Source of the DNA: Fimbriosthenelais zetlandica
Lineage: Eukaryota
Assembly: GCA_977030845.1 (NCBI GenBank)
Contig: OZ365109.1
Location: forward strand, 44,144,001-44,208,000
DNA: 64,000 nucleotides
Direction of reading: 5' to 3'
In this document: positions 1-40,446 of the stretch, piece by piece
How positions within the stretch are numbered: the first letter of the stretch is position 1
Layout: each line of letters opens with the position of its first letter
Notes under the pieces: generated by a model
Told to the model about the DNA's origin: nothing
What the model saw: the letters and a program-made list of their open reading frames with translations, nothing else
The model's database searches: none
Position numbers and translations under genes: made by a program

Positions 1-3000
1 ATTAACCATCATGCAGTTTTCTTCGTGTAATATTTCATTATGAACAAGCCATGGTCAATTGGCAGAATACGACCTCCGGGTGCAATTTAAGTCGGAGACG
101 CAATTGAATTATTTCACGACAAGATATATCTTATTCGATAACATGTGCTATATAATGTATTATTTGTATGGTATATATTCCTCTCCGTCTCTGACTCGGG
201 AAGAGGCATATTTTTCTTATAGTTGCAGCTCGGGGTGAGAATGTAAGTTAAAGGGGTGGATACTAAAATGTCCATAAAGCATGGTGGAAGTACTGTACGG
301 TCGTCACCAGCTTCCTGCCTACTTGCCTGTATGTTGAAAGATCACCTGATAGAAGACTCTTAGCGCGTGTTTGCCAGGAATATGTCTGTCAGAACCTCGT
401 TATTTCGAATCCCGAATCTGCATTATGCTTGTTATATCAGTTATATAGATTTATCTGTGATTATCACTACTACAGTCCGTTCACTCTAGGTTGATCCGAA
501 ACTACAGTACAAATGTATGGTGGTTATGGTGGTTAGAGTGAACAGACTGAATAATTATACAAAGCGCAGACTCATTTAATTGACTATTTCATAATGGTAA
601 AACAGCCCAATTATCGCCCAGGCAAATTAAGACGTACACGTATTTCTGTAAAGAACTACATATAGTATACATTTCTGCTGCGTTTTCATTGCAAAAAGCC
701 GTGTTGAACTTTAAAAAATCATAAGTTCAAAAACAAGTAGATCCTTCAATTATAATCAGGTCAAACATGACGCCTCTTATACGGACCGGAAGTAAGAGTT
801 TCCGACCTATAGATTTGATTAATGCGTCATGACCTCTATGCAATATTCATGCCTTTAGTTACGTATGACAGTGCCCAGATCCACGGTATACAATCTAAAA
901 AATTTAAAACGTGGGCATGCATGCGATATGATGTTTCTTGCAGGCTTAATATTTAATTAGTTACCATTTCTCTGAATAAAGTAATATGGGGAGAAAATAA
1001 CCTCAAGGATTGATTCATCGTATCATATGTTACTAAATATTTAGGCTATATTTCTGAATGTTGCTTCTTTCCCACAATCATTTTGAAGTCATAAGTGGAC
1101 CTATGAGGGATATTGCACATTAAATATGGATGTTTGCTTCTAATATAGAAATGTCACATCTGGCCACCATTGGTGAGGTTTCATAGACCATAATAACCCT
1201 GTATACCAACTGTAGGATTTGGCGTAGTAGAAAAGATGTCAACCTTTACCCTACAGCAATATCCATCCCTATACTATCAATAACCACTCTACCAAGACTA
1301 AATTGGAGCAGCGATTTCCTGTTCTTAGTGAGGCTACATTTAGTAAAAATACCTTTTATTGTTCTATCTATTTTTAAATACTTAACATTTAAATAGATAG
1401 CTAAATCGACTGTTCAAGCAATCGCTGTACATGTATACGCCAGTGGCTTTAAGGGGATAAGTATTACCAATACACCACTCGAAATTTGATGTATGGACTC
1501 TGATGAAATGAGATGAACAGCAACCTTCCTTGATCGAGGACTTGCTCATCCATAAATAGCTTCACCCTTGGCAATGCTTTGAAAAGATATATGTGTGCTA
1601 TTCACTGGCTTAGGAATAATATTGCACTGGCATGAATAATCCAGAAGGGGGGTTGTATTGATTGGTCCTAAAAGACATGGGATATATATATGTGGCGTCA
1701 TGATCAAAAGGCATTATCCTATACACGCGACCCTACAACTTATTCCAATGCAGGTTGTGGACTCGATGATCTGAAAATGTTCTTCTCTGAACCTCAAGGT
1801 TGCAGTAACCAAATAAAATTATTTTATTTGGTTTCAAACAATAGAGTAGAACCAATTAATGAAATAGTTCTTCACTCGTTTTTTCGACCAACATTTTCTG
1901 TAAACCGGCATTCCATTCCATCTACTTTAATATCGTATTAGTACTGAAAGAATTGAGTGCTTATCATAATATGAAGGCGGAAAACACAATGGTGTGATTT
2001 CATTTTCATTCAATTATATCGTATTATGAACTATAATTGAGCGAGATGACCGGGAGAGAATACTAAAACGTATTTATATATGAAGGACACCACCCTTCCC
2101 CCTTCCATCCTAGCTGGAACCTGTCACTCTCCAGAATAAATAGAACATCACAGGCAACTTGCAAAATGGTGATCTCCCAGGCGTCGCAAGGGGCCGGCGA
2201 AATGATCACTTTCTGATGGGTTGGTTGCCATAGTAATCCCAGCACAAGATAAGAGTCAACGGCTTCGCTGCTTTCTCTTGATGGTCTTCTGCACAAGGGT
2301 AACAGACACAATTATGGCCCACACGAGTTTAACCAGAAGACTTTCCCCTTTAAAGATGAACAACAACTCCAAAGGGATCCCGATGATTTAGCACCCTCTG
2401 TGTGAAAAGGCTATATAGCCAACATGTATGGTTATTTCCAGTGTTTTATCAATATTTTCTCCCTTGAGAAGTTAATTCCAAAGCTAGGTCAATCGGAATT
2501 AAAGATCAAAGTTTGTAATGCATATATATACTTATTATAGCCATATTTTAGTTTTAAATTACTAATGTGGCATCAGCAAATGACATTACATCATTTCCAA
2601 ATTAATCATGTTTCGATAATCTTGTCATATTTACAATACTGCTGGTAGATCTTATAATTATGGACACTTTTATTCAGAAGGGCACTCGTTTAGACTATTA
2701 AAGATATGCGCCTTTTTTCTACTGCGACCTGGCTTCGAACCCGCTTTGGCTAACCTTTGGTTGGCTTTCCGGTCCTACACTCTAGCATTCGCTACTGGTC
2801 GCCCCCTACAAAAGTATAGTATCATTAAATTTTGAAAACAATCATGTGCCCTCGCACCCTCACCATCATTCTGAAATCCTCCTCCACTGTTCTTCCCAGA
2901 TGCCCGAGCTACTCCAGAGACGGCATCACTGAGCAGCTCAACTGTATAGCTATCCCATCTGCTGGGATAACTTGCAACTACAGTATCGAAGGTTTCAGGT

Positions 3001-3961
3001 CGCAATATTCCAGATTACAGATATAATGAGGCCTTTTTCTACAGAACAATTTCTGATATTATGGCATTATATGAGCGACTTGCGTGCCTGGGAGTGGGAT
3101 CTGAGGCAACTTGCGGCGTTGGTATATAGCCTAATTCACACCCATACGTATTCCCCATCTGTTAATATACATAGGCCTAATACATGTAGACCATGTACTT
3201 ACTTGATACGAATTTATATAAAAAAACAAAAAACTTTTCACGCCTAAAGGAAATACGTAAACTGCAAACATGATTGATGATTGATTTCAACCATGGGTAA
3301 CAGATTTAGGCTAATAAATTGCGACCCTCGTTAGAATTGACGTAGCACTATATAGCACTGATATGACAACAATGGATACAACCGTAAAATGTAATATTTA
3401 TTATGAAATGCATACACCAATCAGACAAAACATTTATGTATGTACGTCAACCAGTGCCAAGAGAGCATTAGATGTCTTGAATAATTTAATTTAATGACAG
3501 GCTGTCCTTGGTGTCATTCACTTTATCAAGCCATGCGTATAAAGATCGATGCTCTTCGAGTTAAAACTTTTGATGGCTATCTCTAGTCTGTTGTTCTTAT
3601 GTCATTTTTCTTTTGCATGCTGGGCAGTGTGTTTCCCTTTGCAACAATGCAGGATTATTGACACCCTTTCAATGTGCGAATTTGGATGTTTGAGGATGAC
3701 AGAGACAAAAACATCGATCCTGATAAGATCAAACATGCAATGTCACTAAATACTTCTACGGCTGTTGGGAGACGTAAAACCTGTTGTAGAAAACACATAT
3801 TGAATTAAACCTTCAGCTGGGAGAGGAGTCAATCAATCACAAAGGCTTCCGTGAACTATAGTGTCTGGAGGAGTAGCATAATTATTGTCGGATCTAGGCC
3901 TAAATAAGTCAGTGTGGTTCTCGATACAAGGAGCTTCAGAGTTTCATTCCCTGGCTCAGCC

Positions 3962-6900
3962 ATGGCAGATCCCACCAAAGGTAAAGGGGGCCTTTTTACC
4001 ACTTTTATATGAATACACATGTATAAGTACATGTATAGTAAATATTTGATTTTGGAAATTTGGGAACATTAAAATCCGTCTAACCAAAGTTAGTCAAAGT
4101 TTGTCGACAATAAACACGCATATACACTGTATAAAAGTATAGACCGTTTTCCATAGACTTATCTATGGAAAACAGCTAACTTTTGGTAGTTGTGTGTACA
4201 TGTTATATAAAATGTTTCTTGGAAATATTCAGAAGACCGAAAATGGGGCCGACTTTTGTACGACTTTACTCAGGATACGACTTTACATGGGATTCGTTAC
4301 ATTACACAGGAGAAGGCATCCTGGCTCCGAAGGTACAGATCTAATGATACATATTTTACAACAGGTTCATAGTCCAAAATACATTAGAATATGTGAGTCA
4401 CACATATATACTTTTTTTTTGCTAATCATACCTGAAAGCATTGGCTGAATATAATTATTGACTTTCGTCTTTTTCCACAATTAGGCCTAGAGATACATAA
4501 TTATTATTTCAAAAGTGCACATGTGGATGGCCTTACTATGGATACTAGTATTACTAGTAAAATTAATCATTTATCAAATTGTGTTTCATTTCCCTCCAGG
4601 GCAATATGGATAATACTAATTTTGTGCACATTCACTGGATTCTTGGCAATGATAATTGTCAGCCTTATCAAGTATTATGCTTATCGCACAACCACAAGTG
4701 TTGCCATCACGTATGAAGATCAACTTCCCTTCCCTGCCGTTACTGTCTGCAACAACAATATGTTCAGGCAAGTAATGCTAATATTAGAATATAATAGGAT
4801 AATCGGATCCTTCTGCGTAATGACAAGTTTACCATAATCTTTTACTGTACTTCTTGGTCGTTTACTGTTACTGTATACCTCTGTGGTTTTCTCAGAATAC
4901 CTAATATGCTACGACTTACATTGAATTGATTATTCAGGTTGACGAAAGCATTTGAACATGGCCTCTACGATACTTTACACGCACATTTCGAAGAGACTGA
5001 TTCTGATGGTAATTTATAGGCTTCGGATAAATATCGATTTTCTGTTCGTATACAAGGTTATAAACTACTATATTCTGCCTTTTTTGCTCTCTTACTTTCT
5101 TATTAAAATACAATTTTCCCCTCCCCTTGACAGAAATGACAGGTTGCTCACGCAAGTATCATTTTCAAGCGGAATTCTGTCTTGACGGGACCAAGGCGGA
5201 GAGGAATATAATTGAGAAATGCAAGGACAATGTTGAAAAACATTTGACTTACGTCAATGTTACTCTGAACGGGTGTCAAATACTATGTTCTGATGTTCAT
5301 GGGGATACATGTAGTAGCATTATATATGTCTGGAAGACAAAATCATGTGTGCTACTAGCTGGAAGTTGCACTTTCAAGGATAACACAAACAATAATGAGA
5401 AAAACAATGGAAGTAAGCAAGGTCCTCGCGCCAGAAGTCAGTATGACAGCGCTGGTTATCCACTTCATCCATGTGGGAAAAAGATGCCTGATATGGAAAT
5501 CTATAAGAAAATAATTTGCCATAGAGGTAATATTTTACCATTGCATTTATATGTCAATATGTCACTGATTTTATGCACAATTGTCTCACCGCTATGATAG
5601 AAAAAAACTGTAAAGGACATCTCGAGAGAATCGTTATAATTAAATGGTGAATCAATCCTTTTGATATGTACAGGACTTACTTCAGTGAAATGTGACTGGG
5701 AAGGACCCCATTGCACTGTTAGAACGAACTACATCAATGTCAGGTGATTGCACTTGGCGCGACCACAGCTTTTTATGAGCCATTTACCGATGTCCGTTTT
5801 ACCTATGCCAATTAACATAAATGGCCGCCAATTATTTTTGAGGCAAGGCTTTGGTAATGCCAAGTACCTATGTCATGTGTTTTTAATTGGCGACACCAAT
5901 TAAATCTTAAATGGCGGTAACAATTATAGGATTAGGAAGAGCCTCTTTTCACTTGGCTATACCAATTAAATTATAAATGGCGGTACCAATTATAGGATTA
6001 GGTGGGCCTGGGCCATTTAGGTTTGAAATATTTATATTATTAATTTTTTGGTTAAATATGGTTGCAAATAATTTACCACTAATTATAAAATTAAATAAAC
6101 GCACATATGAAATATTATGTACAAATTTTATTCGATAATCCCTCGAATATATATACAAAATCTAATGCATTATCACAATGCAAAGTCATCATAATAATCC
6201 AAATAATTCATCAAAAAATAACAATGGAATCTATGTATGGAATAATTAAAGCGTTATCACATAATGCAAACGAGCCTAATCAAAATAGACATGGATGACA
6301 AATGGACACAATTGTACCAAAATGTTGATACTTTCATCGACACACAATAATAAATATCTCACAAATCTAAATGTATAAAAAAATGTAAGCATTATCACAG
6401 AATGGTTTAATAAAAATCATTAGCATGAATACTAAATGTACACAGGTGCACCCAAGATTCTGAAACATTCGTCACAAGAAAATATTAAATACCTCACAGG
6501 TATTATTTTATCTAAATATAAAATAAGTAAAGTAACACCATAAAATGGTAAATAAACATAATTAACATGGAAGGTGAATACCTCAAAATATACTATAATT
6601 GATTGCCTGATCGAGAGAGCGAAGTAATCGTACATTCAAACATGGGTGAATAGCACATACAGATGTCTCAATTTTACAAAGATTTGAAGCACTTAATACA
6701 AAAAAACAAAAGTTCCATCGTCACACTAAAATATTATTAACTGAAATATAAATATACAGTAATTTAACTTTTAGATGTGATTAGATGGCTTAAATTCAGA
6801 CATAGAGGGATATAATCGGTTCTCATTTTTAAGCCTGTGTCAGAAGGTCTCATGATGAGAAATTATTCCATTACCCTGCATCATTTTCCTTGAAATGAAT

Positions 6901-9900
6901 TAACCGCGTAAAATCAGCACTTTTTAGACAGTGCCGTTGTGTTGAATGTCATTTGTTCACATAATTTATATACAATTACATTCCAATATTCCATTGAAAT
7001 TGTGCATATCGTGTGTCTCTTTTTAAACAGATCCGTGTCTCGTGTCCTCATGTCACAATAATGTCTCCAACGATTTTAAGGTTGTGTTGTGGTGCAAATC
7101 GCGTCGAATTTTACCCATTTACATATCCATACATACGGTTAAGTATTCTCATAGCATGTGTTACATGGCGACTTCAGATGTATTCCAGTTTGGTCAGCCT
7201 CATTTCAGATGATTTATGTTGGGTGAATTGTTTCCTTTACATGAGGACTCTGTAAAGAGAATAAACGAGGTGTTATAACACAATATATTAATCTTAACAA
7301 AAAGGTTCAGAACTTTGGGAATAATAACTGATATTGTTGGTCAATGAATCATTAGTAAATATAATACTAACCTGTAACCGCTGTAATGTGTGTCAGTGCC
7401 TTCTTCATGAGTGATGCCCATTGAATTGATATCAAACTTTGGATACCATCGAAACATACACGTGTACCGTTAATCTGAATTAAAAATAATAGAAATAAGA
7501 ACAAAAGTATAAGTAAATTGTCTGAAAAGTCGCCTTACGAATTGCCGTCATATATATTCATAATATTTTTACAAAAATGGACTATGGATGTCTTATACCG
7601 GACAATAAAATTATATCTCAATATATTTTAACAGTAAGCATTTTCCCTCACACTTCACACTCACAAGGAAAGCTTCACCTCCAAAATGCATGGCAGGGAA
7701 GGGGGTAACAGGTGGTAGCGTGACCTAATTATTCACCAATACTTATTAACACCTTTTTACATACTTCAAAAGTACCTTTTATATGACCTCAAAATAATGT
7801 GAACATTATTAAATGTAAGAAATTCCACAGAATTACAAAGAGAAACTTACTCAAACTCCTGTGCCTCCATCACACACATGGCCTATGTCATAGGTTCCCT
7901 GGGTCCCTCCTGTTCATTGCCTATTAATAAAACAATACCGGATATTATACTCTGATAGTTTTAAAACATAATCACATGATAAAGATGCATGTATGACTGG
8001 GGATAAATCCATGTTGCCATCTTTTTCCACACAAAGAATTGTCAAGTTGTACTGCTTGGGTCCCCCCCCCCCCTACATGGATAGATATCCCCTTAACATT
8101 CCCCTCATAGAGGCCGGTATTCCTGGGACTGACCCCGACATGCTTCCCCCCTCCCCTTCCCCTATCACTCAAACAACGATCTCCAATGTTTTCCTGTCCC
8201 TCTCTAGCTGGTAATTCAATTCAAGGTCATGCATTATCTAAAACCATGCATAGGGATTCACATGTAATTCATGAGCATGTATATAGATATTCCGTAATGC
8301 TATAATGCTATACTTACATTAATATTGCCGCAAAAGTGTCCGTTGATAATGGCGACTCTGCTTCTGGGGTACCTCCGGCTAGACAGGTCTCAATCCCGCA
8401 TTAAATAATTAAAATCTATTCTACCATAACGTTTTTGTTTGATTGAAGCAGATAAATTAATCCAAAGACCATTCCACTTTATGTGTAAATATCTCGCTGA
8501 AATTCCCATGTAAATGTATGAACAAAGCTTTAATAGTAGGCTAAATTATCTTGACCATTCAGGGAATAATGATATTAACTGCGGGATTGCAATATTAGTC
8601 CTTCAGCAGCTTGTCCGGGGGGGGGGGGGGGCACTCGGACTCGGAATCAAATATAGTACTAGGTAGTAGGGCTTGTTTTCTATCTGTTTTTAATCATTCA
8701 TGTACCCCTTTTTACATTTACAAAGAGGAACAGAACCATTTTTTTCAAAATGTAGTGGCCTTTGGTGTTCCTTGAGACTCCGGGCTGGTACTTAAAACAA
8801 AAGACTGCCGATGAGTAACCCCCCACCCCCCACACACACCCACCATCTTCCAAACATGGAGCCTTGTTTGCCCCACGCCTATAATCTCACCTCGCGTCCC
8901 CTCTTTGTATAGTCCTATTCTGTCATTATGTTTTAACTGCGGGCTTGAAAATATACCTGGAGCAGCATGTAACTGCATGTCCGGGGGCACTCGGAATCAA
9001 AGATGGTACTAGCTAGGGCTTGTTTCCTTTCTGTTTTTAATCATACATGTACCCCTTTTCACATTTGCAAAGAGGAAAATTTGTTTGTTTTCCAAATTTT
9101 GTGAACTTTTATGTTGACATTAAAATAACCCTTTTCCTTGTGAGTCTATGGCGCTTGTAGCAAAACAAAAGACTGCCAATTAGTAATGCCGGGGGGCCAA
9201 AACCTTAATGGCTGAATTTGTGCGACAGAAGCCAGCCACGTACGATCGAGATTATCACACCCATAGATGTGAGACTGGTTTCACTTCAGCTGAATACATG
9301 CTTTTGTCACCTTTGTGTCAGGTGGCATGTATATGAGCCGAATACACACGTCTGGTGGAACAAAAATAATACCTATTTCTGTTTTAATTGGTAAATTTCC
9401 TGTACTACGTTACTTTTATTTTTTGTACTGTTATTATCATCATCGCCATCTTATAATGTTTATATTGCTGTACATATCATAATGTCGGTTTCCCATGTAT
9501 CATTAGTGTAACTATAACTTTCGAATTAATTCAAGGAATAAATGATTCTATACATGACATGTATTTCACAGGTTATACCAAATTTCATGGACAGTAAAAT
9601 AATTACTACCCAAAATTATTTCCATATTGGCTGTGATAACCTAATAACTTGTATTAAAGCTTAACCCCAAATTCGCACATTAGGGGCGACCCATATTTCG
9701 CCCCACACCTAGCTATATCCCCGATTCTATAGTCATGTTCTGTTAATATATATTTCACACATCATTCACGCACCCCAAAGTGTGAATCAATGTAATTGAC
9801 TATGCTTTTCACATCTAGAACTTGGCTTGTGGGACTCAACCCACACTAGCTGTAATCTCCTATGCGGGGTGAGGCGGGCGGGTGGGTGGCGGGAGGGGGG

Positions 9901-12900
9901 GGGGGGCTTATGCTAATGAGGTAGGGTAGCATTCATAGCCTTATGTTTGTTTGAATTAATTGAAGGCCAAGTATTCAAGGAAATACCATTGAAATGCCAT
10001 TGAATGTCAATTGACATAAGTGTAATTTTAAATGGCCGAAATTGGGCTAAGCGATGCGCCCCGAGAACAATAGAATTTCACTTGGCTAAATTAGGTATGT
10101 GAATTCTACGTGACATTGCGTGTTTTTTAATGGCGGTCACTTAGTTTTAATAGGATTTCTAACAGTGTGCGAATTTGACATTTTGGCAACAGTGAACGAA
10201 AAGGAGTCATTTCAAGTTGTTGAAGCAAGTTTAAATCCCAAATATGATCATACCCTTGAAACAAGTAAGATTCTTTGATGACTCAGTCTTCATTGAAGTA
10301 ATCTGTTGGCTCAACTGCACTTCATGGAGATGACTTTAAGAGCCTGTGATCCAAGATGGAGCTCAAATCTCGCGAGACCCCTGTTACTTATATAATCAGG
10401 TTTATGTCTTTAGGGATTATGTTAGGGTTAGGTTTATATGTTAGGGGGAAGGTTAGGGTGAGGTTTGGTTAAATACTAGTACCTATAAAATGACAAATTA
10501 TAACGTTACTCGTTAACGTTAACGTTATTCCCTTGAAATTATTCCGTTGCTAAGCGCCATGTGTCGCGAGACTTCTGGCCGCCATCTTAGATTAGGGCAG
10601 TATACTATAGGCCCTTCAAGTGCAGTTGTACCAATCTGTTTACTATATATTTAGGTTCGAGGCATAATAATTATATATGCAGGTTGAACTCCCCTTCCCG
10701 AACAATGACTGCAGTTATTCAATGCTGCAAGTGGGTAGGGGGTTAGGCCTATTTCTTTGTTAATTCCCATCAAAGCTTATCTATATATAGTCTTTCTCAG
10801 CTCAACCTGACTCCCCTTAATTGCAGACACCAGAACTATGCTTATATGGAGTCTGGCTATTAAGTTGAGCTGAGAAAGACTATACTATAATACTAGTTGC
10901 TTATCATCTAGTTACGCATACCAGGCCTATTTTAAACAACTAGCAGAGACGCCTTTTTACTCCTTTTCAGGATATGGACACTACCTCAGACTGCCCACCA
11001 CAAGGAACGCTCCAATAGATTCTCAAGCACGTCTGACACTACGATATTCCAAATTCGAAGGTCACTGCCTGGAATTTTATTTCCAGCCGACAGGTGATGT
11101 CCCCGATAGAATTTACATTCATCAGATCGATGACAGCTTTGGAGTTCACCTTGTGGCTGCATACGAATTAGGTTTTAAAAGGGACCAGTGGAATCGTGCA
11201 TTCATACAGTTGTTTGATGGCATCTACATGCTCGAGTTAAAGGTTGAAAGATCTAATGTGAAAAAATCCGAAACATCAGGGATAGCAATTGATGACATCG
11301 TTGTAGACAGATGCTTGCACTTCAGTAAGCAGAAAGCAAATTGATTAGTACACTACTGGCTTACAAACTTGAAATAAGGCATTAGTTGTTATATCTTAAA
11401 TTCAATATACATATACCTATCAAAACTATGAGCTCTCCAATTGTTTATAGCTGAACGTGAATGTAAACGCACAAGGACAGGCATAGATTACATGGGTTTA
11501 AAGATGACAACTGTCAGTGGTAAAACCTGCAAGACTCCATGTCACAATAGGAACAATGACCAGGGTGGTCCTCATTGTCAAGTGGCAACAGCAGATGCGA
11601 CATATTCAATTACAGAATATTGTCACATCCCTTTTTGTGGTGAGTAGAAATATTGATGAAATGGTGCCATATAGGACAAAAGAATTTGTAGAGAATAGGC
11701 TATAAGAAATTTTAAGTTTAGGCAATTGCATGGTATATAGGGAAAACCCCTCCTAAGAATCTCAGTTGACTTTTGTAATCTTTAGAAGTTAGTAACTGCT
11801 AACCAAGATAGTAACTTGATTACATTTCCACATCCAGAATGTCAGAAGGATCAGTTTAAATGCAGTGACGATTTTTGCATACCGGGCAATCTCACATGTG
11901 ATGGCAAACCTGACTGTGAGGATGGTTCTGACGAAACGTTACCCTGTGGTAATACTTTATTACTATCTCTCAAGTATTCAATGCATGGCTCTTAGCTTTA
12001 TTTGTTTACCCTCGAATATACTCAAACCGGTATTAAGGTGCTCACACACTAATCAGTTTCTGTCTCCATCCGATAGCTGTCCGATTCAATATTAATTTTC
12101 TTTTCACATCAAATGCTTGTAATTTGAACATTCCGTTACACCTAGGTAAGGGTAACCACTGACACAATCTCAATCATATATTCTTTAGCGGATAAAATGA
12201 GTGTTGACTGTGAGTTTTCGGATGAATATCTCTGTGGTTATCAATTTCCCGCGAGGTCTGCACCGTGGAGTAGAAAAAGACCAGTTGATTATGTGGACAA
12301 AGAACAAAGGATTTCTAATGATCATCTTGGTTCATCATTGGGTGAGTTTATGTCAATTTAGTCATTTTTATATTATGGAAAAATAGGAATTTTGATATGG
12401 ATTTCTCAACAATCCTACGACTTGAATATTTGAGCTCCTTGAGCAAATACATATAATGATTATTACTCATGATGTTTATTTCCTAGGATATTTCATGGAC
12501 CCGTATACAGGACTACTTCAAGAAGGCGAAAAATCTTTGCTGGTTTCTCCCTTCACGACAATTGACAATAATTCGACCTATCTCACATTCTTTGTATATT
12601 TCCGTAACACTACATGGGGTTTAGAATTATTCGCAGTTCCGGAGAGTTTGTCTGGCTTCTTTTTCGAGGAGATTCCATATAAAAAGACTAAAAAACGAAA
12701 TGGATGGGTGGAAGAAATGGTACTGCTACCGGAAGGATCATATAGAATCGTCTTTCAAGCATCTGCTGGACCTACATTCAGATCGGAAATTGCTTTGGAT
12801 GGGATAAAGCTAGTTCGTGTTCAACGGACAAAAGGTGGTGAACGTGTGGAAGTACCAACAATCTCATTTGAAGATGAAGGTATATTATTATTAACAACAT

Positions 12901-15900
12901 CTTTTATTCATCTTCCTCATGGGAAGTGAACTTTATGCATTTTTATGAATATTTGATGATACAGAAATTCCTTTATAAACCTTGATAAATTATTACACAA
13001 TCGAGAGTCGCAGCATATAGCAGCCAACATTACAGCCACTGTCACCACCCACCTCCCCTAGCAGCAGCTTCGACTACTAAACGTGCACTTCAGAGACAAC
13101 TGGAGGGAATCAGCATCAAAAGCATGGGATCAGCATAGCCATCAATGATAGTGCATTTAGATATTATGACAACTAGTATAGTTAAAAGCCGATAGGCTGG
13201 TGACGTGTATTAGGTCTACTGACCGGTTTTCGGCAATGACAAAGTGATTGAATCACGGCTAAACAAGTCTCGTTTGTTTCACTGCCTTCAGGCCGCATCC
13301 CCATACATTCTAGTGGGCCTGCGCTAACAGTCTTGTCAATTTTTTCCTCACCTCAAAATTATTGTTGAAATCAGTCTGCAGCTCCTTCATGCTACACTCA
13401 GCCGAGTCTGCCTCAATGCTGTACGTATATCCCTCCACCTCCTCCGAGCACAATCCTCGTATATATATCCTGGTAACCGGGGTCATAAGTATCTAAGACC
13501 TGCCACAATATGGATATGAGAAAAACACTCAAATCCACCATATGATTTCCTCTACACCAATCAAGTCATGGTCCAATGATTTTCTTGTGATTGCCTTCCA
13601 AACTGTCTAGGCCTATACATAGGGCTACCTGTACTCTTGGTTTTAATTTCATGTTGGTTTATTATGAGATCGCAAACAATGCATGGCTACAAATAGTACA
13701 ATCACTCTCTGTATAGAGAAACGGAAAGGTTGAAGAAAACAGGATTTGCTGGATACAGATGTCAGTCTGACAATGGGCAAATTAGCATGCATGCAAATGA
13801 ATTAATATTTGTAAATTATATATTAAGTTTATTATTAAAATTAGAAATTAAAAACTAAATTTCTCATGCAGGTGATTACAACGGAAGCTGTTACTTTGAT
13901 GGTGCAGACCTATGTGGATATACACAATTCTCCTGGTCCGGCAAGGCAGAGTGGCAGACCTTTCCTATCGCACTAGCGGAACTGGCATTTCAGGCCGCAA
14001 AAGACGGTTATGGAGAAAGTAGTAAGACTGTTTTAAATAAATATCAGAATAATTGTTATCTTACACGGAACATGGCATTACGCCAGTAGATTAGGGGCCT
14101 GTTTCAGCGTAGAAAATTTCCCATAGAGTTAGCATTGCTAACGGTTGTTCTGAAACAGGCCCCTGCTCAAGCCTGATCTCTTCAACTATGGGTTTCACGG
14201 GAGTTACAATGAAATGATGATTTTTTTAGCTGAACGAGAGTACTACACAGACGCTTCTGGTTGTTTCGCGTCTCCCGGTTATCCAGACACTTATGATCGG
14301 GACGAATACAGAACCTATGTGATTGGAGGTGCATTAGGGACAACCGTAGAGCTTGAGTTTATTGGCGATTACGATGTAGAAGAAACTTATGACACTATTG
14401 AAGTAAGTCTTTTTCTTTTTCGTTATAACCAGGGTGTGCTATAAATAGGGCATCCTTAGTGTTTCTGCGGTCCTGTGAAATTTCACAGTACGCATCACTA
14501 GTACGCCCCTATTATTAATATGAATTAATGAGGTTGACAAACACTGATAAAGAACATAATATTATACAGTAAATGTTTATGACAATCATGGTGAACTTGT
14601 CTGTTACTTCTGAAAATGGTCTTGTCCTTATGAAACCACTATGTTCATTCACAACAGTTATGGGAGTACATCAATTATAGCTACGTACACATAGTGACCT
14701 ATAATCAGAATGTGCGGCCGCCAAAATACAACTCGATATCATCTCTTGTGGTACTGGTATTCGCATCCGATGCAGAAAACCAGTTGCAAGGTTTTGAGGC
14801 ATGTTACAAAATAAATGGGTATAATGAAACAGGTGAGTCATAAGCTAATATAATTTATATAAAATTTGTTAAGTTTGGTTAATAGACTCAAATCAGTTAA
14901 TTAATATGAGGGCATGTTCTGTCAGTGGACTCAAATCTAGCATTAGAGAATTAAAAGTCTGAAATTACCCCATATAGCTTACAAAACTTGTTTTAGTAAC
15001 ATTTTACATGTAATAATTTTCCTTTTTGTCCAATATGATTATAGATTATGCGCTTCTACTTGTGGTGACCGGACCTATATCATATAATGCCGAAATAATA
15101 CTAACATCTCCAGAGCTCTATGTAAAGACAGAACAATGTGCCTACATTGCTGTGCAAACCTTGACTACTCATGCGTAGGTTTATCTTTATCATTTCTGTG
15201 GCTATATATATCGCCCTTGAAACTGACTTCTAAGGCAGATGCGGCGGTATATATAGCTGCTACATCTGCTGCACTAGCTGGGGACTTGCATAATTATTTT
15301 GCAAGTGGTCCAGCAAGACTGGTATCTAACGTAATTAGAAAAGTGCCACATCTGCCACTGAAAATCGGACACAAGGGCTGGCCACTACAAAATTCTCACA
15401 ATTCCTATAGGCATAGATTCCATAGGATACCCCCGAACACCCATCCTCAAATTATAGCCTTCCCATTTTTTATCAGGCCTTTCTAAATGATGTCATTATA
15501 ATAACCATGGCCTGTGAGTGAGTAATTTATTGATAATAAAAAATCATTTTGTCTTATAGGGTATGCACCATATCATCGCACGGCCAGGAAGATTGTGAGA
15601 CTATAGAATATCTGGGAGGTGGAATGACGTTACAGTACGACTTTTATTATTATGTAATACCAGTCGGGACACAGTTCTTGAAACTCGTGTTTGATACGAG
15701 TACCGTCTGGGGACAGTCAATTTATGCTGCTATCGAACATATGAATATCTACAACCAGTCTTGTACATCTTTTGGTAAATATTATATTAGTTTTGGCACA
15801 ATGACACTACATGGACTTTACCATAACATACACCTACCATACAAAAGTTTAGACTGTTGTGTTATGTAAGAGGGGGATTGTTCATTATATCTAATGGGCT

Positions 15901-18900
15901 GCAAATTCCAGTATCTCCTGCATCTGCCAACATTTTACGGGTCTTGTGAATATGTACAGAATATAACTTTAGTCATAATATGTTACTTAATCACATCATG
16001 ATGTTTCCATCTTCTAGACGTAGCCCAAAATTTGACGTCTGAAAAATGCCACTTCACCCTCGAGGATGACTGTGGCCTCATGGACATAACCACCCATGAA
16101 TTCTACAGATGGAGACTGCTACGAGAGATCTATGGTAGGCCTACTACATCAGAAAACGTTCTTAATTTTAAATCCTCAATGCAACATACGCTGACAATGA
16201 CATAAGCAATGAGGCAATGTTTCTATACATTGTATTTTATATCAATGGAAATCTAAGCTACTATACTATGTTACTCGGCTACATAATATTATGTGTAATT
16301 TTCTTCAGTATTCAGTGATAAGAAAAATGAATGTTTTTGTTTCCTTTCAAGCTGAATATGCAAGTGCAGAATACCCGGAAAATACCTGTACTTTTTATGC
16401 ACAATGGAGAATTGGTAACAACAATAGTATGGTCCCTACACCCCCGCCAATTGGGGATGTGTCTAATCACCCACCTCCTCCCCCTCCTGGTTCAGAACCT
16501 CCTGTCCCTCCTGGTTCAGAACCTCCTCCCCCTCCTGGTTCAGAACCTCCTGTCCCTCCTGGTTCAGATGATCCTCCCCCTCCTGGTTCAGAACCTCCTC
16601 TTCCCCCTTCTGGCTCAGAACCTCCTCTTCCCCCTTCTGGCTCAGAACCTCCTGCCCCTCCTGGTTCAGAACCTCCTGCTTCTCTTCCTCTTTCACCAAC
16701 CACTATGACAAGCCCTATTACAAGCACCATAGTACCAGCAACTACTACTCCATACGATTCCACTTCACCTAACTATGACGACTATGGTGACTATGACTAT
16801 TCAGCCAGCGGGACAGAACCCTTGAATAGCGAGAAAGAACCCGAAAATGGTAAGACTTTAGTTATAATTAATCTTTGTAAGACAGTGGGTGGGTTGCAGA
16901 AAACCAGTTGGCTTACAGAAATTCTGTTCGCCAAAACCGATGTTGGCAAGCTAGTTGGCGAGCAAAATTAAGCCAAATCCTATACATGTATGTGGTTGGC
17001 GAAACACATCACCAAGAAAAAATGGGCGATTTGGGGATGGCGATGGCGAATCACCAAATATTACATGCAAACCAAAATATTTTTTTAGAACCTATGCATT
17101 AGGCCTAATTAGAACACAACCTAATTAGGCCAAATCCTATTTGTTGTTGGTGAAACACATCGCAAAAATTAGTACAATGATGACAAATCATTTGGCGAAT
17201 TGCCAAATATTATGCAAACAAAAATAGTTCTGTAACCCACGCATTAATTAGAACAACACAACCCTGGCTAAATCCACTCGTTATATATGTTTCAACATAG
17301 GCCTACAATTCTAATTACTATTATTTCTTTCTTTTCTGGTTTAGCGGTCTTCATTTGCAAATTTAGTAAATATGACATCCACGAATGTTCGTTGCTTAGT
17401 CCGAAGCTCAACATTGCATCTGAATCCTGTGCAACATTCATTTTGTCCCTGTACGGTTGTTCCTTCACCACTTCAAGTCTAGTGTTCCTGAAATCTGAAG
17501 GAGAAGATTCTGAGCCAGTGTTCCTTGGACAGACCATGTTAAAACCTTCCTCATCGAAACAGACGGTGGAACTGGAACTAGCCGCAGGTTTTTACGGCAT
17601 TGTGATATCAGCCAGGGCACACTTTGCAGATTTAGTCTTACACGGAATAGAGATAACTGAAGGAGTCTGCATGCAAAATGGTTTGGTTCTGATCATGTTT
17701 TTATAAATTCTTTTACTTTTCTTTTCCATCCTATTTTATAACAGATTTTTATAACAGCATTAATATTTTATAATTATTATTACACTATACTCTATCTGGA
17801 CAATATTTTCCCCCAGAAAAGAAAGATTAAGAATTTTAGCAGCACTGACACATACAGAGACATATCTAAACGGCCATACACGTCAGTTGCTACACCGAAT
17901 ATATATGTATTATGAAAATTAATTCATTCTGTTACTATAGCTACAGTTAATGTGACCAAGCAATACACGGATTTAGATGACGACGAAACGATAGGACCAA
18001 CAGTACCTCCAACACAACCTCTACCTCAACCAACAGATCCAAACACAGGAAATGAGTCAGCAGTTCACCATATCTCAAGTAAGAGTCTGCAATAATGTTG
18101 CCAACTCCCCTGTATTTAATCATCCATAAATGGTGTCATTATTATATTAACATTTATCATATTTCTTTTGACAGTCCCTCTGTTATATTAGATATCAGCA
18201 CAAATTCCTTAAAATCTTTTTAGTGTTTACTCGCATGGACACTTTTTTGAATGCCACTGCACATCGTTATGAGGATTTCATACACCAGTAAGTAGGCTAG
18301 AGCCAAACTCCACCAATTATTGTCCTTTATTGTCCTTAAGTATTTAAGCCAATATTGTACTCTAATAATTAATTCATTAGCTAATAATACATGTACATGT
18401 ATACCACATCTCACATTTAGTCTAATGGCCATAGGAAAGTTGATCGATATAGAGTAAATAACACTCAGATATTTCATCTATTTCAGCTGCACATGGAACA
18501 ACGAAATCTGTAATGGCACTTCCTTTACCCAAGAATTTACTGATATGGGTCTCTGCTATACGTTTAATGGGCGAAATTCAAAGCAACAACTCCTATCCCA
18601 AACAGCAGGTGAATTATCACTAATCCATCTTTAATGTCTGATCTTGTGTGATTAACGGACATCCTCATCCTGATTAGGAACCATATAGATCTGTTCATCC
18701 CCCTCTCGCAAAACTTTTGCGATCCCTCATTGGACCTCCGTACCAAGTCTCGCTGATAAAAACAAATTGAAGGGAAAGTGCTGCGACTGGCTCCGACTTG
18801 CAAAAGATCTGTCACAGCACTGCAGCAAGCCAATGATTTCCTTAGGATGCTCTCGCTGAATGTATTTTTCTCTTGCTGCTGGCCCAGCGAGGGCGCAATT

Positions 18901-22414: not shown

Positions 22415-22619
22415 TATGATAGCAAGGAAAAAATGCTGATAGTTATATGAAAGTGAATGCAAATGTACATATTGGCATCAGTTTTAATCTCTTCCCATCC
22501 ATACTGAAAGTTCCCCTCTATACACATCACAGCTGTGCTGACATTATAGTAAATTTTCAATTACGAAACTGTATATAGCCTGCAATAATGCTTTTCAAAT
22601 GATAATGAAACTGCCACAT

Positions 22620-23377: not shown

Positions 23378-23910
23378 ACAGTAATATTAAATGCATTTTC
23401 CAATCAGACAATACATTTACCCATCAACCTCTTGCCAGAGAGCATTAGATGTCTTGAATAATTTAACTCGACGACAGATTTCTTTGGTGACATGCACTTT
23501 AGCAAGTCATGCGTGTGAAGATCGATGCTCTATGGTTTGAAACCTTTGATGGATAACTCGATTCTCTTGTTTTCTTTCGCATACTGTCATTATTGACACC
23601 CTTTCAATGTGCAAATTTGGATGTTTGATGATGACAGAGACAAAAGCTTCGATCCTGATAAGATCAATCAATGTCCCTAGATATTTCTACTTCTGTTAGC
23701 AGATGCAAAACCTGTTAGAAGATAGATTTTGAATTAACCCTTCTGTTCAGGTGGGGAGTCAATCAATTTCAAGGGGTTTAGCGAGGTATAGTGTCTGGTG
23801 GCCGAGTCATTGTTAGATCTATAGGCTGGTTCAGTGTTGTTCTCGACACCGGGAGCTTCAGAGCGGGTCGTTCCCTGGTGCAGCCATGGATGAAACAACC
23901 AAAGCTAAAG
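23378..23910 (+). promoter_or_regulatory. Duplicated upstream/promoter region of paralog 2, homologous to about 3389-3980 upstream of paralog 1
   Basis: Shared blocks, e.g. gagagcattagatgtcttgaataatttaa, gacaccctttcaatgtgc.aatttggatgtttga, tcgatcctgataagatcaa, gagcttcagag. Confidence 0.6.
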
Positions 23911-26900: not shown

Positions 26901-29900
26901 TGTCAAATCCTGTGTTCTGATGTTCATGGTGATACATGTAGTAGCATTATATATGTCTGGAAGACAAAGTCCTGCGTGCTTTTAGCAGGAAACTGCATTT
27001 TCAAGGAGAAGGAGAACAAATCAAACAATGAGACCAATGATGGTTCTAAGGAAGGTCCACGAGTCAGTCAGTATGACAGCAAAGGCTATCCCCTTCATCC
27101 CTGTGGGGATGAAATGCCTGATATGGAAATCTATAAGAAACTTATCTGCCATAAAGGTAATATTGCTATGACTTCATTGACTTTATTGCTTTATTGTTTT
27201 CATAATTGCAATAGTGGTGGATTTATATATTTTTTTTAAATGTAAATGACACAATGTAAAATCTTAATTTTGATGTTGAGTCCGCCCTTTTGATATCTGC
27301 AGGATTTCCTTTGGTAAAATGTGATTGGGAGACACCTCATTGTGAATTTGAAATTTTGGCAACTGTGAGGGAAAAGGAATCATTTCAAGTTGTTGAAGCA
27401 ATTCAAAACCATCCTGATACTGATCATACCCTTGAAACAAGTAAGTAAAAGGGATTAATAAAAAAAAGCAAATTAACCTACAAATTTAGATTAATTTTAA
27501 GTGACTCTTGATTAAGTAGTAAAACTTAGTAGTTCTAAGTCTCTTCTCTTTTCAGGATATGGACACTACCTAAGACTGCCCACTACAAAGAATGCTCCAG
27601 AAAATTCCCAAGCACGTCTGACACTACCTTACTCCAGATTTGAATCACACTGCCTGGAATTTTATTTCCAGCCGACAGGTGATGTCCCCGATAGAATTTA
27701 CATTCATCAGATCGATGACAGCTTTGGAGTTCACCTTGTGGCTGCCTACGAAGTAGGTTTTAAAAAGGACCAGTGGAACCGTGCATATATCCATTTGCTT
27801 GATGGCATCTACATGCTCGAGTTGAAGGTTGAAAGATCGAATGTGAAAATGTCAGAAACATCAGGGATAGCAATTGATGACATCATTGTCGACAGATGCT
27901 TGCAATTCAGTAAGTAGAATGCAAATTAAAGCATAATTTGTCATGAAGTGAATATAAAATGTATTTATATGGAACACAACGAGACGTACGTTGATCTGTG
28001 ATTGCAGATGGGTCACATGAGTGGTGAAGACCATCATGAGTGATGCTTGCAGTCCCTTAATCTTCGCTCGCTTCTCACAAACATTGCACTGTTAATGCAA
28101 TTTCCACGTGTGATTTTGGTCAGCAAAACGCAGATCACCGTGTTGGAAGTTGTGATATAAACAATGTATACCGATTGTTTTAGGTGGACGTGAGTGTAAA
28201 CGCACAAGGACAGGCATAGATTACATGGGCTCAAAGATGACAACTGTCAGTGGTAAAACCTGCAAGACTCCATGTCACAATAGGAACAATGACCAGGGTG
28301 GTCCTCATTGTCAAGTGGCAACAGCAGATGCAACATATACATATACAGATTATTGTCACATCCCATTCTGTGGTGAGTAGGCCTAATCAGATTCCCAAGT
28401 AGCAAAGGATCCAAGTTTTTCTGTTGGCATTTTCAATTGGTAAAGTTCCATTTAATACACTACATTGGTGTCCTGATAAAACCTCGTAAGTGACATAATA
28501 CAAGGGACTTACGAGCTTTCATCCGTGTAATAATTTCCCATAGACAGCATTGCTAATGGTTGTTGATACAGGCTCCTGACCACCAACGATATCAGTGTAT
28601 ATCAGCTACATTTTTATATCCAGCATGTCAGAAGGATCAGTTCAAATGCAGTGACGATTTTTGCATTCCGGGCAACCTCACATGTGATGGCAAACCTGAC
28701 TGCGTGGATGGTTCCGATGAAACGTTACCCTGTGGTAATACTTTATTACTATCTCAATAATTATTATTATGAGATTGTCCTCAAAATTAATAATATAGAA
28801 ATTATCCGTATATGCCTTTGAATCTGATGCCTCTATCTCTTAATATACTAATATATAGGCTATATATTTAGGACCCATGCAGGGTATGTACACCTCGAGA
28901 GGTATACCAGGGAACTTGCAGGTTTTGGTTGCCTAAAAAGTAAAAGTATATAGATTCTAGATTCTGAAAAATCGTAAAATAACTATCGCCTTTACAGTAT
29001 TAAAAGCTTCTAGTATGATTACACTACTGTATCTTATATTCTTTAGCGGATAAAATGAGTGTTGACTGTGAGTTCTCGGATGAATATCTCTGTGGTTATC
29101 AATTTCCCGCGGGGTCTTCACCGTGGAGTAGAAAAAGACCAGTTGATTATTTAGACACGGAACAGAGAATTTCTAAGGATCATCTTGGTTCATCATTGGG
29201 TGAGACTATTATTTCTTTATTATTATTTTCTTAAAGTGACACTGTCTGTTTGCAATTGCAGTTTGCATATTTTCAACATTCCATTTAGATCCACCCCTAC
29301 TTGAGGGGTACTTTTCAGTGGAAAGGGCCATGATCTGAAAATACACTGCAAATATGAAGTACGGGGTGGTGGTGGGGGGGGGGGGGGTCATGTAAAATCT
29401 GCAGGACCGCATGGGTTCATTTATTTAGTTCTGTAAATAAGGATTTGGACATGAAATACAGGACTTAATGTTCTGGTATTGATATCCTTCGGAGAATGTA
29501 CTGCATGATATTGTATTTTTCTTATTGTCTTCTAATATCTTTAGATATATTCATTTTCTAGGATATTTCATGGATCCGTATAGCGGACTGCTTCAAGAGG
29601 GCGAAAGATCTATGTTGATTTCTCCCTTGACGACAATTGACAATAATTCGACCTATCTCAAATTCTTTGTATATTTCCGTAACACCACATGGGGTTTAGC
29701 ATTATACGCAGCTCCTGAGAGTAGGCCTATGTCTAGTTACTCATTCGAGCTTGTTCCATATACAATGACTAAAGTAAGAAATGGATGGGTAGAAGAAACT
29801 GTACGGTTACCAAAAGGATCATACAGAATCATCTTTGAAGCAACTGCCGGACCTGCATTCAAAACTGACCTTGCTTTGGATGGGATAAAACTAGTGCATC

Positions 29901-39472: not shown

Positions 39473-40446
39473 TATGATAGCTTGGATGAAATAATGTTAT
39501 GTTGAATACAAATGTGCATTATCATTATTTGCAAATATCATTTTTACTTCACTCGTAAATGACGTGTGTTTTAGGGTGGGATCAATTGCATTCATACTAA
39601 TGATGATATCAACAGTTGTAAACTGTTTTTCCCATGCCCAATCTTGCGCCACATTTAAGCCGAACAATCTGCCACCCAATAACATATACCTAGGTATATT
39701 GTATTGTACTTAGTATAATTTAGTGCTTTTTTGAATTCCTGTAATAATGGGTTATGTATTTTGGCTGTGAAAAAGTTTTAATGTGCTTATAGTGGTGGGT
39801 CTCTGATAAGACCATGTAAACGTAGCATGATGTACTCCACATCCACATTAGTTGAATGTTCCAAGTTGAATGAAGCTAATCCCTCAGATAACAGTTGTGT
39901 ATAATCATAAAGATCGAAATCGATGTAACTTATAAATAAAGTGATCATTGCAAGACCACGTTCTCCTTTATTATTTGCAATATTCTGAGCAAGATGTAAT
40001 GTCGGGAAATACAAGTAACGGTCATCGTTCTGATCATATTGTATACACTATAGTGCAGCAGGCATAACCAGCTAGATGCTTTGAATTTGATCGTTAAACG
40101 TAATTTTGCAAAGGACTTTTTATGACAGATAGATGTCAATAATGTACGTGTGAAAATGTAAACAAATGGAGAAAAAAGTTTGTGTCAAAAACAGACAAAA
40201 AATGAAAATCGATCCCAAACCACTATCATAATGAAGAATATACTTGGATCGGAATGAGATATTGGCTTTTGAAGATGTTAAATGGACATGATACCCTCAG
40301 GAACTTAGGTGAAAATCAATGTAAATATCCTGCACTATGCCGATAGCCAAAGAGGAGAAGCAAATGAATCATGTTCAATTATCTAAATAGACCAATGTAA
40401 CAGGCTTGTAAGCGTCCTCGACAACCACCTTGTGACAATATTGAAA

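What the first reader, a model, noticed from the sequence alone, without database searches (positions are those of the whole stretch)
5674..10264. Transposon inserted in a coding exon but supplying in-frame splice acceptors that could rescue the gene
Seen: a 4,454-bp CACTG...CAGTG element with a TG duplication splits exon 6 inside the CAT-TGC codons. Read-through from the left half stops (GTC AGG TGA). The element's right end has two AGs (TTTTAATAG at 10153, CTAACAG at 10165), both compatible with the phase-1 donor of exon 5, giving G-F-L-T-V-C-E-F-D or V-C-E-F-D and losing the first MAM1 Cys. I found no stops or frameshifts in the other 29 exons. Inference: either a very recent knockout or a functional allele rescued by TE-end splicing.
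Basis: partly seen in the sequence, partly recalled or inferred. Interest (0 to 1): 0.7.

Follow-up and report, generated by a model that had tools for sequence, protein, structure and literature searches.

The report
Young transposon breaking a channel-gene exon
A very young, non-coding 4.45-kb jumping gene sits inside a protein-coding exon of one of three neighbouring sodium-channel genes in an invertebrate-type animal genome, and the sequence suggests it simply breaks that gene copy rather than being neatly spliced out.

Summary
A 4,454-bp element (window 5714-10167) has 11-bp terminal inverted repeats and a TG duplication. It splits a 135-nt phase-1/phase-1 exon at the second cysteine codon of a MAM domain. 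Removing the element and one TG gives an exon that aligns end to end with the intact exon of the neighbouring paralog.

The element has no ORF over 81 aa, no Pfam domain and no Rfam match. Its family has about 300 copies and makes 2-bp duplications (TA in 26 of 30 copies). This copy differs from the family majority at 3 of about 3,395 compared bases, so the insertion is very recent.

The rest of the gene looks intact: 1,928 codons align with paralog 2 without an in-exon stop, Ka/Ks 0.37.

Both in-frame AGs exist, but against a matrix built from this gene cluster's own introns they are weak (4.0 bits) and very poor (-2.3 bits). A strong cryptic donor (9.1 bits) lies 30 nt inside the left end. 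With the intact native acceptor it would make a 70-nt exon that shifts the frame with every downstream acceptor.

No RNA or DNA reads could be found, so splicing and polymorphism remain untested. Most likely this is a recent, probably polymorphic, disruptive allele of a redundant tandem paralog.

The parts
5134..5526 (+). Exon 5 of paralog 1 (393 nt, phase 1 to phase 1, PAN-like). Its donor after 5526 (ATAGAG|GTAATA) is the one that any rescue splice would use.
   Evidence: The acceptor is conserved with paralog 2 (26761) and the donor sequence context is conserved too. PAN_1 match is weak and below Pfam's cut-off: E 3.8e-4, 20.7 bits against 21.4.
5674..5713 (+). Left 40 nt of exon 6, behind an intact native acceptor (AG at 5672-5673). 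It encodes G-L-T-S-V-K-C-D-W-E-G-P-H and the first two bases of the second Cys codon.
   Evidence: Acceptor score 5.6 bits.
5712..5713 (.). Left copy of the 2-bp target-site duplication (TG).
   Evidence: Empty-site reconstruction against paralog 2. Four other family copies have matching non-TA duplications on both sides.
5714..10167 (+). Non-autonomous cut-and-paste DNA transposon, 4,454 bp, 36% G+C. No ORF over 81 aa, no Pfam match on the two ORFs of 80 aa or more (80 and 81 aa), no Rfam match.
   Evidence: At least 35 copies are identical over the terminal 200 bp at each end. There are 632 TA-flanked termini genome-wide.
5714..5724 (+). Left terminal inverted repeat, CACTGTTAGAA.
5741..5749 (+). 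Cryptic splice donor CAG|GTGATT (exon would end at 5743). It overlaps the read-through stop TGA at 5745-5747.
   Evidence: 9.1 bits, above 26 of 34 real donors of this gene cluster. All resulting isoforms are frameshifted.
5880..6005 (+). Subterminal direct repeats, 57-nt units 66 nt apart, carrying AATGGCGG...ATAGGATT. The same motif recurs next to the right terminus (about 10127-10157) in the same orientation. I infer these are transposase-binding sites.
   Evidence: (families D3-D5). Function is inferred.
10152..10153 (+). First in-frame AG inside the right end (exon would start at 10154). It adds G-F-L-T-V before the Cys.
   Evidence: In frame. 4.0 bits, above 7 of 50 real acceptors. A branch-point-like TTAAT lies 23 nt upstream.
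10164..10165 (+). Second in-frame AG, inside the right TIR (exon would start at 10166). It adds V before the Cys.
   Evidence: In frame. -2.3 bits, below all 50 real acceptors. Another AG lies 12 nt upstream, and the CTAAC motif is only 3 nt away.
10157..10167 (+). Right terminal inverted repeat, TTCTAACAGTG.
10168..10169 (.). Right copy of the TG duplication. With C at 10170 it rebuilds the second Cys codon.
10170..10264 (+). Right 95 nt of exon 6, with its native phase-1 donor (AAACAA|GTAAGA).
10971..11324 (+). Exon 7, the rest of the first MAM domain.
   Evidence: Pfam MAM profile positions 43-155 of 158, E 7.9e-8, 32.7 bits against a cut-off of 26.4.
27303..27440 (+). Uninterrupted homologous exon of paralog 2, used as the empty-site reference.
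   Evidence: 82% nt identity over all 135 nt of the reconstructed exon.

Best explanation
A member of a currently or very recently active family of non-autonomous cut-and-paste DNA transposons has inserted into exon 6 of the first of three tandem DEG/ENaC-type channel genes. The family has CACTG termini, an 11-bp TIR, subterminal repeats and a 2-bp duplication, usually TA and here TG. The insertion lies at the second cysteine codon of the first MAM module.

Shown: the element, its duplication, the ancestral empty site, the youth of the copy, and the otherwise open host gene.

Inferred: on the pre-mRNA, the intact native acceptor at 5673 and the strong cryptic donor at 5743/5744 define a 70-nt exon. 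Failing that, transcription reads into the element to the TGA at 5745, or ends at one of 8 AATAAA signals. Most transcripts would then carry a premature stop, so the allele would be null or strongly hypomorphic.

Minor in-frame products are possible: exon 5 joined to 10154, to 10166 or to exon 7. All of them lack the first MAM cysteine or the whole MAM N-terminus. The allele is probably tolerated because two paralogs lie next door, and it is probably polymorphic.
For: Anatomy and empty site.

Family behaviour:
- At least 35 copies are 100% identical over 200 bp at either end.
- 632 termini against 24 controls.
- Duplications are TA in 26 of 30 copies, with matched TG, TG, CG and CA pairs in four others.

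Youth: 3 substitutions in about 3,395 nt against the family majority. Ks between paralogs 1 and 2 is 0.365.

Host gene otherwise intact: 1,928 codons without an in-exon stop, Ka/Ks 0.37.

Splice-site scores: native acceptor 5.6 bits, cryptic donor 9.1, TE-end AGs 4.0 and -2.3, with 29 stronger AGs between 5714 and 10970.

Frames of all isoforms, and 8 AATAAA plus 11 ATTAAA in the sense strand of the element.

MAM assignment.
Against: - There is no expression data. Both run searches listed nothing, so no isoform was observed.
- The matrix rests on only 50 and 34 sites from two related genes whose exon borders I inferred myself. It ignores enhancers, silencers and RNA structure.
- The AG at 10153 is within the range of real acceptors and has the native exon-6 donor 111 nt downstream, so some in-frame product is plausible.
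- Exonic DNA transposons are removed from 90-100% of host mRNAs in C. elegans by SOS splicing (PMC12779559). If the same happens here, part of the transcripts would be in frame.
- No second haplotype is in the assembly, so polymorphism is only assumed.
Confidence: 0.68

Rival explanations
1. Spliceosomal rescue. Exon 5 is spliced to the AG at 10153 or 10165 in the right end of the element. This skips the left exon half and the element and gives a full-length channel subunit that lacks 13 residues, including the first MAM cysteine, and still works.
For: - Both AGs are in frame and open through exons 7 and 8.
- The AG at 10153 scores 4.0 bits, above 7 of 50 real acceptors.
- It has a branch-point-like TTAAT 23 nt upstream and the native donor 111 nt downstream.
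- From my own knowledge, not checked here: maize bz-m13, where a dSpm element in an exon is removed using an acceptor in its terminus.
Against: - The native acceptor is intact (5.6 bits). It is followed 70 nt later by a 9.1-bit donor that shifts the frame with every downstream acceptor.
- The AG at 10165 is below every real acceptor.
- 29 AGs between 5714 and 10970 outscore the one at 10153.
- The product has an unpaired second cysteine in an extracellular domain.
- No RNA data.
Confidence: 0.1
2. Partial rescue by another route. One route is skipping of the whole symmetric 135-nt exon 6, which is in frame and deletes 45 residues. The other is non-spliceosomal SOS splicing, triggered by pairing of the element's ends, which cuts the element out imprecisely and leaves some in-frame mRNAs.
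For: - Exon 6 is phase 1 to phase 1, and the exon 5 to exon 7 junction stays open.
- SOS splicing removes Tc1, Tc3, Tc4 and a human mariner from exons in worms and human cells and needs paired inverted repeats (PMC12779559).
- The first and last 60 nt of this element can form a duplex of -35.1 kcal/mol, against -21.5 +/- 3.4 for shuffles.
- The genome has a CAAP1-domain hit above Pfam's cut-off.
Against: - The perfect repeat is only 11 bp (-13.8 kcal/mol), against 54 nt for Tc1. Pairing must span 4.4 kb.
- In the paper, rescue worked only for insertions in poorly conserved regions and only for the in-frame fraction. Here the break is at a conserved cysteine of a folded domain.
- Exon skipping removes the whole MAM N-terminus.
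- SOS splicing has not been shown in this animal.
Confidence: 0.17
3. Artefact: the element was placed in the exon by a misassembly, or it is a somatic or rare-read event that does not represent the germ line.
For: The family has hundreds of near-identical 4.45-kb copies, the kind of repeat that can confuse assemblers. No reads could be laid to check.
Against: - The junctions are exact: complete termini, a clean 2-bp duplication, and perfect restoration of the paralog-like exon when the element is removed. A chimeric join would not create that.
- Non-TA duplications of the same kind occur at four other copies.
Confidence: 0.03

Closest known systems
Exonic DNA-transposon alleles that keep partial function because the element is removed from the pre-mRNA: maize dSpm/Ds alleles such as bz-m13 (my own knowledge) and C. 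elegans Tc1 alleles (cited in PMC12779559)
   Same: A non-autonomous cut-and-paste element sits in a coding exon. Its right terminus reads pyrimidine-rich...CAG|TG, like the Spm terminus, and offers an AG in frame with an upstream host donor.
   Different: No RNA evidence exists here. The terminal AGs score poorly against this gene's own acceptors, and a strong donor inside the left end favours out-of-frame products.
SOS splicing (AKAP17A-CAAP1-RTCB) of exonic DNA transposons, PMC12779559
   Same: The substrate is the same kind: a DNA transposon with inverted ends inside a coding exon of an animal gene. A CAAP1-domain gene is present.
   Different: The perfect inverted repeat is 11 bp rather than 54 nt or more. 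The insertion hits a conserved cysteine, where that study saw no functional rescue. The pathway is untested in this organism.
Introners: transposons that become introns on insertion (PMC9860276; review PMC11282704)
   Same: A multi-copy non-autonomous TIR element with a short duplication, inserted in coding sequence, carrying GT and AG near its ends.
   Different: The best donor/acceptor pairs leave 34 or 46 extra nucleotides, so the element is not removed in frame. It is 4.45 kb, not a short MITE-like introner. Whether other copies sit in genes as introns was not examined.
Tc1/mariner superfamily
   Same: A 2-bp duplication, TA in 26 of 30 copies. Termini start with CA.
   Different: Four of 30 copies, and this one, have TG, CA or CG duplications. 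The TIR is only 11 bp with subterminal repeats. No DDE_3 or DDE_1 gene was found inside a pair of these termini.
CACTA / CMC superfamily
   Same: CACTG termini, a short TIR and arrays of subterminal repeats.
   Different: The duplication is 2 bp, not 3. Only one sub-threshold Transposase_21 hit exists in the whole genome, and it lacks these termini.

Membership tests
Class II cut-and-paste (TIR) transposon, non-autonomous | Terminal inverted repeats | tested here: met
   Perfect 11-bp CACTGTTAGAA / TTCTAACAGTG.
Class II cut-and-paste (TIR) transposon, non-autonomous | Target-site duplication of fixed length, shown by an empty site | tested here: met
   A 2-bp duplication in all 30 copies checked. 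The empty site is reconstructed against paralog 2.
Class II cut-and-paste (TIR) transposon, non-autonomous | Dispersed multi-copy family with no transposase gene of its own | tested here: met
   632 termini against 24 controls. No ORF over 81 aa and no Pfam or Rfam match.
Tc1/mariner superfamily | Strict TA duplication | tested here: inconclusive
   TA in 26 of 30. TG twice, CG once, CA once, plus TG here, all matched on both sides.
Tc1/mariner superfamily | Autonomous partner with a DDE_3 or DDE_1 transposase between the same termini | tested here: inconclusive
   No DDE_3 or DDE_1 hit lies inside a terminus pair. Only part of the termini is listed, and no more genome sequence could be fetched.
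CACTA / CMC superfamily | CACTA/CACTG termini with subterminal repeats | tested here: met
CACTA / CMC superfamily | 3-bp duplication | tested here: not met
   2 bp in every copy.
PIF/Harbinger-ISL2EU (PHIS) superfamily | TWA (3-bp) or AT (2-bp) duplication, as given in PMC4482050 | tested here: not met
   TA, not AT, and 2 bp, not 3 (paper read).
PIF/Harbinger-ISL2EU (PHIS) superfamily | DDE_Tnp_4 transposase within the same termini | tested here: inconclusive
   Two of 72 variant termini have a DDE_Tnp_4 hit 3-6 kb inward. One of the two regions also holds an unrelated DDE_1 gene just outside the terminus, so it is TE-dense. The sequence could not be fetched.
Introner (transposon spliced as an intron) | Splice sites carried or created at the ends so that removal restores the reading frame | tested here: not met
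   Donor at 5743/5744 with the AG at 10153 or 10165 leaves 46 or 34 nt. All such isoforms stop early.
Exonic transposon rescued by a terminal splice acceptor (bz-m13 type) | In-frame acceptor in the element's terminus | tested here: met
   The AGs at 10153 and 10165 are in frame with the exon-5 donor.
Exonic transposon rescued by a terminal splice acceptor (bz-m13 type) | That acceptor is actually used, and the product works | not testable with these tools
   No sequencing run was listed. Scores of 4.0 and -2.3 bits argue against efficient use.
SOS-splicing substrate | Exonic DNA transposon whose inverted ends can pair | tested here: inconclusive
   The position is exonic. The perfect stem is 11 bp (-13.8 kcal/mol). 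The 60-nt ends give -35.1 against -21.5 +/- 3.4 for shuffles. The repeats tested in the paper are 54 nt.

The most novel reading that the evidence does not exclude
The insertion allele is not null. Removal of the element at the RNA level keeps a working channel subunit, and this young high-copy family is tolerated in exons for that reason. Removal could use its weak terminal acceptor, skipping of the symmetric exon, or SOS-type excision driven by pairing of its short ends. That would be a natural, non-model-animal case of transposon buffering at the mRNA level.
Probability: 0.12. Interest if true: 0.55.

Novelty: new member of a known kind. Interest (0 to 1): 0.3.

Why it matters
This is a clean, datable example of a very recent transposon hit in a coding exon. 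It marks a DNA-transposon family of about 300 copies, many almost identical, as active now or very recently in this genome.

The family combines CACTG ends with a 2-bp duplication that is mostly but not strictly TA, and its superfamily is unresolved.

The hit gene belongs to an unusual cluster of giant DEG/ENaC channels that other follow-ups of this scan describe. Anyone modelling or expressing 'paralog 1' should know that the reference allele is interrupted.

If transcripts turned out to be repaired, the locus would be a natural test case for RNA-level buffering of transposon damage outside C. elegans and human cells. The sequence evidence gathered here makes that the less likely outcome.

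Tried and rejected
Reads. Both sequencing-run searches listed no run (kind any, 10168-12400, kind rna, 20122-21557; one search was a busy error). Read laying could therefore not be used. None was listed, which does not mean none exists.

Second haplotype or empty allele in the assembly. Only the locus itself and paralog 2 match.

Annotated or orthologous proteins. The representative search with the 484-aa exon gave 5 exon-sized hits, best 32% identity. The species is apparently not in the protein collections, and I did not spend further protein searches.

Autonomous partner.
- The 14.6-kb and 22.5-kb 'long copies' are ordinary copies with nested insertions. One holds a P-element-like transposon with a 7-8-bp duplication, the other an 18.5-kb element with a 1,746-aa ORF.
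- Transposase_21 gave one sub-threshold hit without these termini.
- DDE_3 and DDE_1 showed no co-location.
- DDE_Tnp_4 showed two weak co-locations.
I did not try to read letters by any other route.

dN/dS as a test of the rescue idea. It was computed but rejected as a discriminator. The insertion is far too young (about 0.1% divergence) for relaxed selection to show.

Introner reading: rejected on frame arithmetic.

Earlier scan notes by words: nothing on this family.

Literature: I found no open paper to cite for maize bz-m13. That precedent rests on my own knowledge.


Full report
**What is there**

The element and its insertion site:
- Window 5714-10167 is a 4,454-bp element that begins CACTGTTAGAA and ends TTCTAACAGTG. 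This is a perfect 11-bp inverted repeat, and similarity between the two ends stops there.
- It is flanked by TG on both sides.
- Removing the element and one TG and joining 5674-5713 to 10170-10264 gives a 135-nt open exon. That exon aligns over its whole length with 27303-27440 of the next gene copy at 82% nt identity (VKCDWEGPHCEFD against VKCDWETPHCEFE).
- This is a paralogous empty site. The TG is a true 2-bp target-site duplication, and the break falls between the second and third base of a Cys codon.

What the element contains:
- It has no ORF over 81 aa, no Pfam domain in its two longest ORFs and no Rfam match.
- It carries subterminal direct repeats with the motif AATGGCGG...ATAGGATT. 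Two copies lie 66 nt apart near the left end and one lies next to the right terminus.

**The family**

- Each terminal 200 bp has at least 35 copies at 100% identity elsewhere in the 447-Mb genome, with about 400 candidates per end.
- TA plus the 11-mer occurs 632 times against 24 for the control pattern. Paired termini on contig 1 are mostly 4.2-4.5 kb apart, with a 3.6-kb class.
- Thirty copies were checked. Twenty-six have TA on both sides. Four have TG, TG, CG and CA, each matched left and right. The enzyme therefore makes a 2-bp duplication with a TA preference, and the TG here is a minority but normal outcome.
- Over about 3,395 compared bases this copy has 3 substitutions against the family majority. 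Other young copies have 0-5 per 1,700.
- The two 'long copies' I fetched are ordinary copies with nested insertions. One holds a P-element-like transposon with a THAP9-type transposase ORF and a 7-8-bp duplication. The other holds an 18.5-kb element with a 1,746-aa ORF.
- I could not find the autonomous partner.
  - Transposase_21 is virtually absent from the genome.
  - DDE_3 and DDE_1 genes do not lie within these termini.
  - DDE_Tnp_4 genes lie 3-6 kb inward of two of 72 variant termini. At least one of these regions is TE-dense, and the TA 2-bp duplication does not fit PIF (TWA) or ISL2EU (AT) as described in PMC4482050.
- The superfamily is unresolved: Tc1/mariner-like by its duplication, CACTA-like by its termini and subterminal repeats.

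**The host gene**

- The window holds three tandem genes. Other follow-ups of this scan describe them as DEG/ENaC channels with a very long modular extracellular arm (I did not re-test that).
- Paralog 1 (about 3400-22470) and paralog 2 (about 23380-39520) are collinear block by block.
- Exon 7 of paralog 1 matches Pfam MAM positions 43-155 of 158. Exon 6 therefore encodes the MAM N-terminus.
- Its C-x7-C pair has the same spacing as the C-x7-C at the start of a later exon of the same gene (at 13872), which I read as another MAM module by its motif only, without a Pfam test. The insertion sits at the second of these cysteines.
- Across 27 conserved blocks, every stop in paralog 1 lies outside the inferred exon borders.
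- Over 1,928 aligned codons, Ka is 0.136, Ks 0.365 and Ka/Ks 0.37. Paralog 1 was a working gene until very recently.
- dN/dS cannot say anything about the time since an insertion that is only about 0.1% diverged.

**What the transcript would do (inferred)**

I built log-odds matrices from 50 acceptors and 34 donors conserved between paralogs 1 and 2 and scored them leave-one-pair-out. Median scores are 7.6 bits for acceptors and 7.9 bits for donors.

| Site | Score (bits) | Against real sites |
|---|---|---|
| Native exon-6 acceptor (AG 5672-5673) | 5.6 | intact |
| AG at 10153 | 4.0 | above 7 of 50 acceptors |
| AG at 10165 | -2.3 | below all 50 acceptors |
| Cryptic donor CAG\|GTGATT at 5743/5744 | 9.1 | above 26 of 34 donors |

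- Between 5714 and 10970, 29 other AGs outscore the AG at 10153.
- The cryptic donor lies 30 nt inside the left end and is the second best of 239 GTs in 5676-10263.
- The native acceptor plus this donor define a 70-nt exon.

Isoform frames, all:

| Isoform | Outcome |
|---|---|
| Exon 5 to 10154 | In frame; lacks the first MAM cysteine |
| Exon 5 to 10166 | In frame; lacks the first MAM cysteine |
| Exon 5 to exon 7 (exon 6 skipped) | In frame; lacks the whole 45-residue MAM N-terminus |
| Any isoform containing the 70-nt exon | Premature stop |
| Read-through into the element | Stops at 5745-5747 |

The sense strand of the element also has 8 AATAAA and 11 ATTAAA signals.

- PMC12779559 reports that C. 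elegans and human cells excise exonic DNA transposons from mRNA without the spliceosome. The trigger is pairing of the inverted ends.
- Excision is imprecise, only a fraction of products is in frame, and function is rescued only for insertions in poorly conserved regions.
- Here the perfect stem is 11 bp (-13.8 kcal/mol). The first and last 60 nt can form a -35.1 kcal/mol duplex, against -21.5 +/- 3.4 for shuffles.
- A CAAP1-domain gene is present.
- This cannot be excluded. The repeat is much shorter than those tested in the paper, and the insertion hits a conserved cysteine.

**What could not be done**

- No public run was listed for this DNA. No junction, transcript end or empty allele could be observed.
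- The assembly has no second haplotype of the locus.
- The species appears absent from the protein collections.

**Verdict**

This is a new insertion by a new family, but a known kind of event. It is worth flagging for anyone using paralog 1, and it is a candidate locus for testing RNA-level transposon buffering if RNA becomes available.

Noticed in passing
L061:6230-7342 and L062:440-1165 (G000:C1:11476200-11490830): A roughly 10-kb P-element-like transposon is nested in another copy of the family. It has a 371-aa ORF with TNP-like RNaseH, GTP-binding-insertion and P-element HTH domains. Its TIR starts CAAAGATTCTACTATA and it has a 7-8-bp duplication.
   Followed up: partly
L065-L067 (G000:C1:28396140-28418730): Another copy is split at element position about 1540 by an 18.5-kb insertion. 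The insertion carries minus-strand ORFs of 1,746, 465 and 397 aa. Its kind was not determined.
   Followed up: no
window 4600-22407 against 25900-39465: Synonymous divergence between paralogs 1 and 2 varies from about 0.10 to about 1.08 from exon to exon. This suggests a mosaic made by gene conversion between the tandem copies.
   Followed up: no
G000, 72 places listed: Termini reading TACACTGTTAGAAG share the 13-mer with this family but never pair with one another. They probably belong to a second, related element whose other end differs, and it could be the autonomous partner.
   Followed up: partly
G000 genome-wide: PIF/Harbinger-type DDE_Tnp_4 genes are very abundant: 477 candidates, many with identical scores and open frames of 360-470 aa. 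This points to several recently active Harbinger-like families.
   Followed up: no
L017 and L018 (G000:C11:40669556 and 40672761): Two left ends of the element lie 3.2 kb apart with identical 15-nt outer flanks. This suggests a local duplication or rearrangement involving the element.
   Followed up: no
window 10390-10470: A degenerate TTAGGG-like run (GTTAGGGTTAGG and similar) lies in the intron just downstream of exon 6.
   Followed up: no
window 8612-8632 and 9887-9907; 8639-8749 and 8989-9096: Inside the element there are long G runs, which account for most length differences between copies. There is also a pair of roughly 110-nt direct repeats about 350 nt apart.
   Followed up: no
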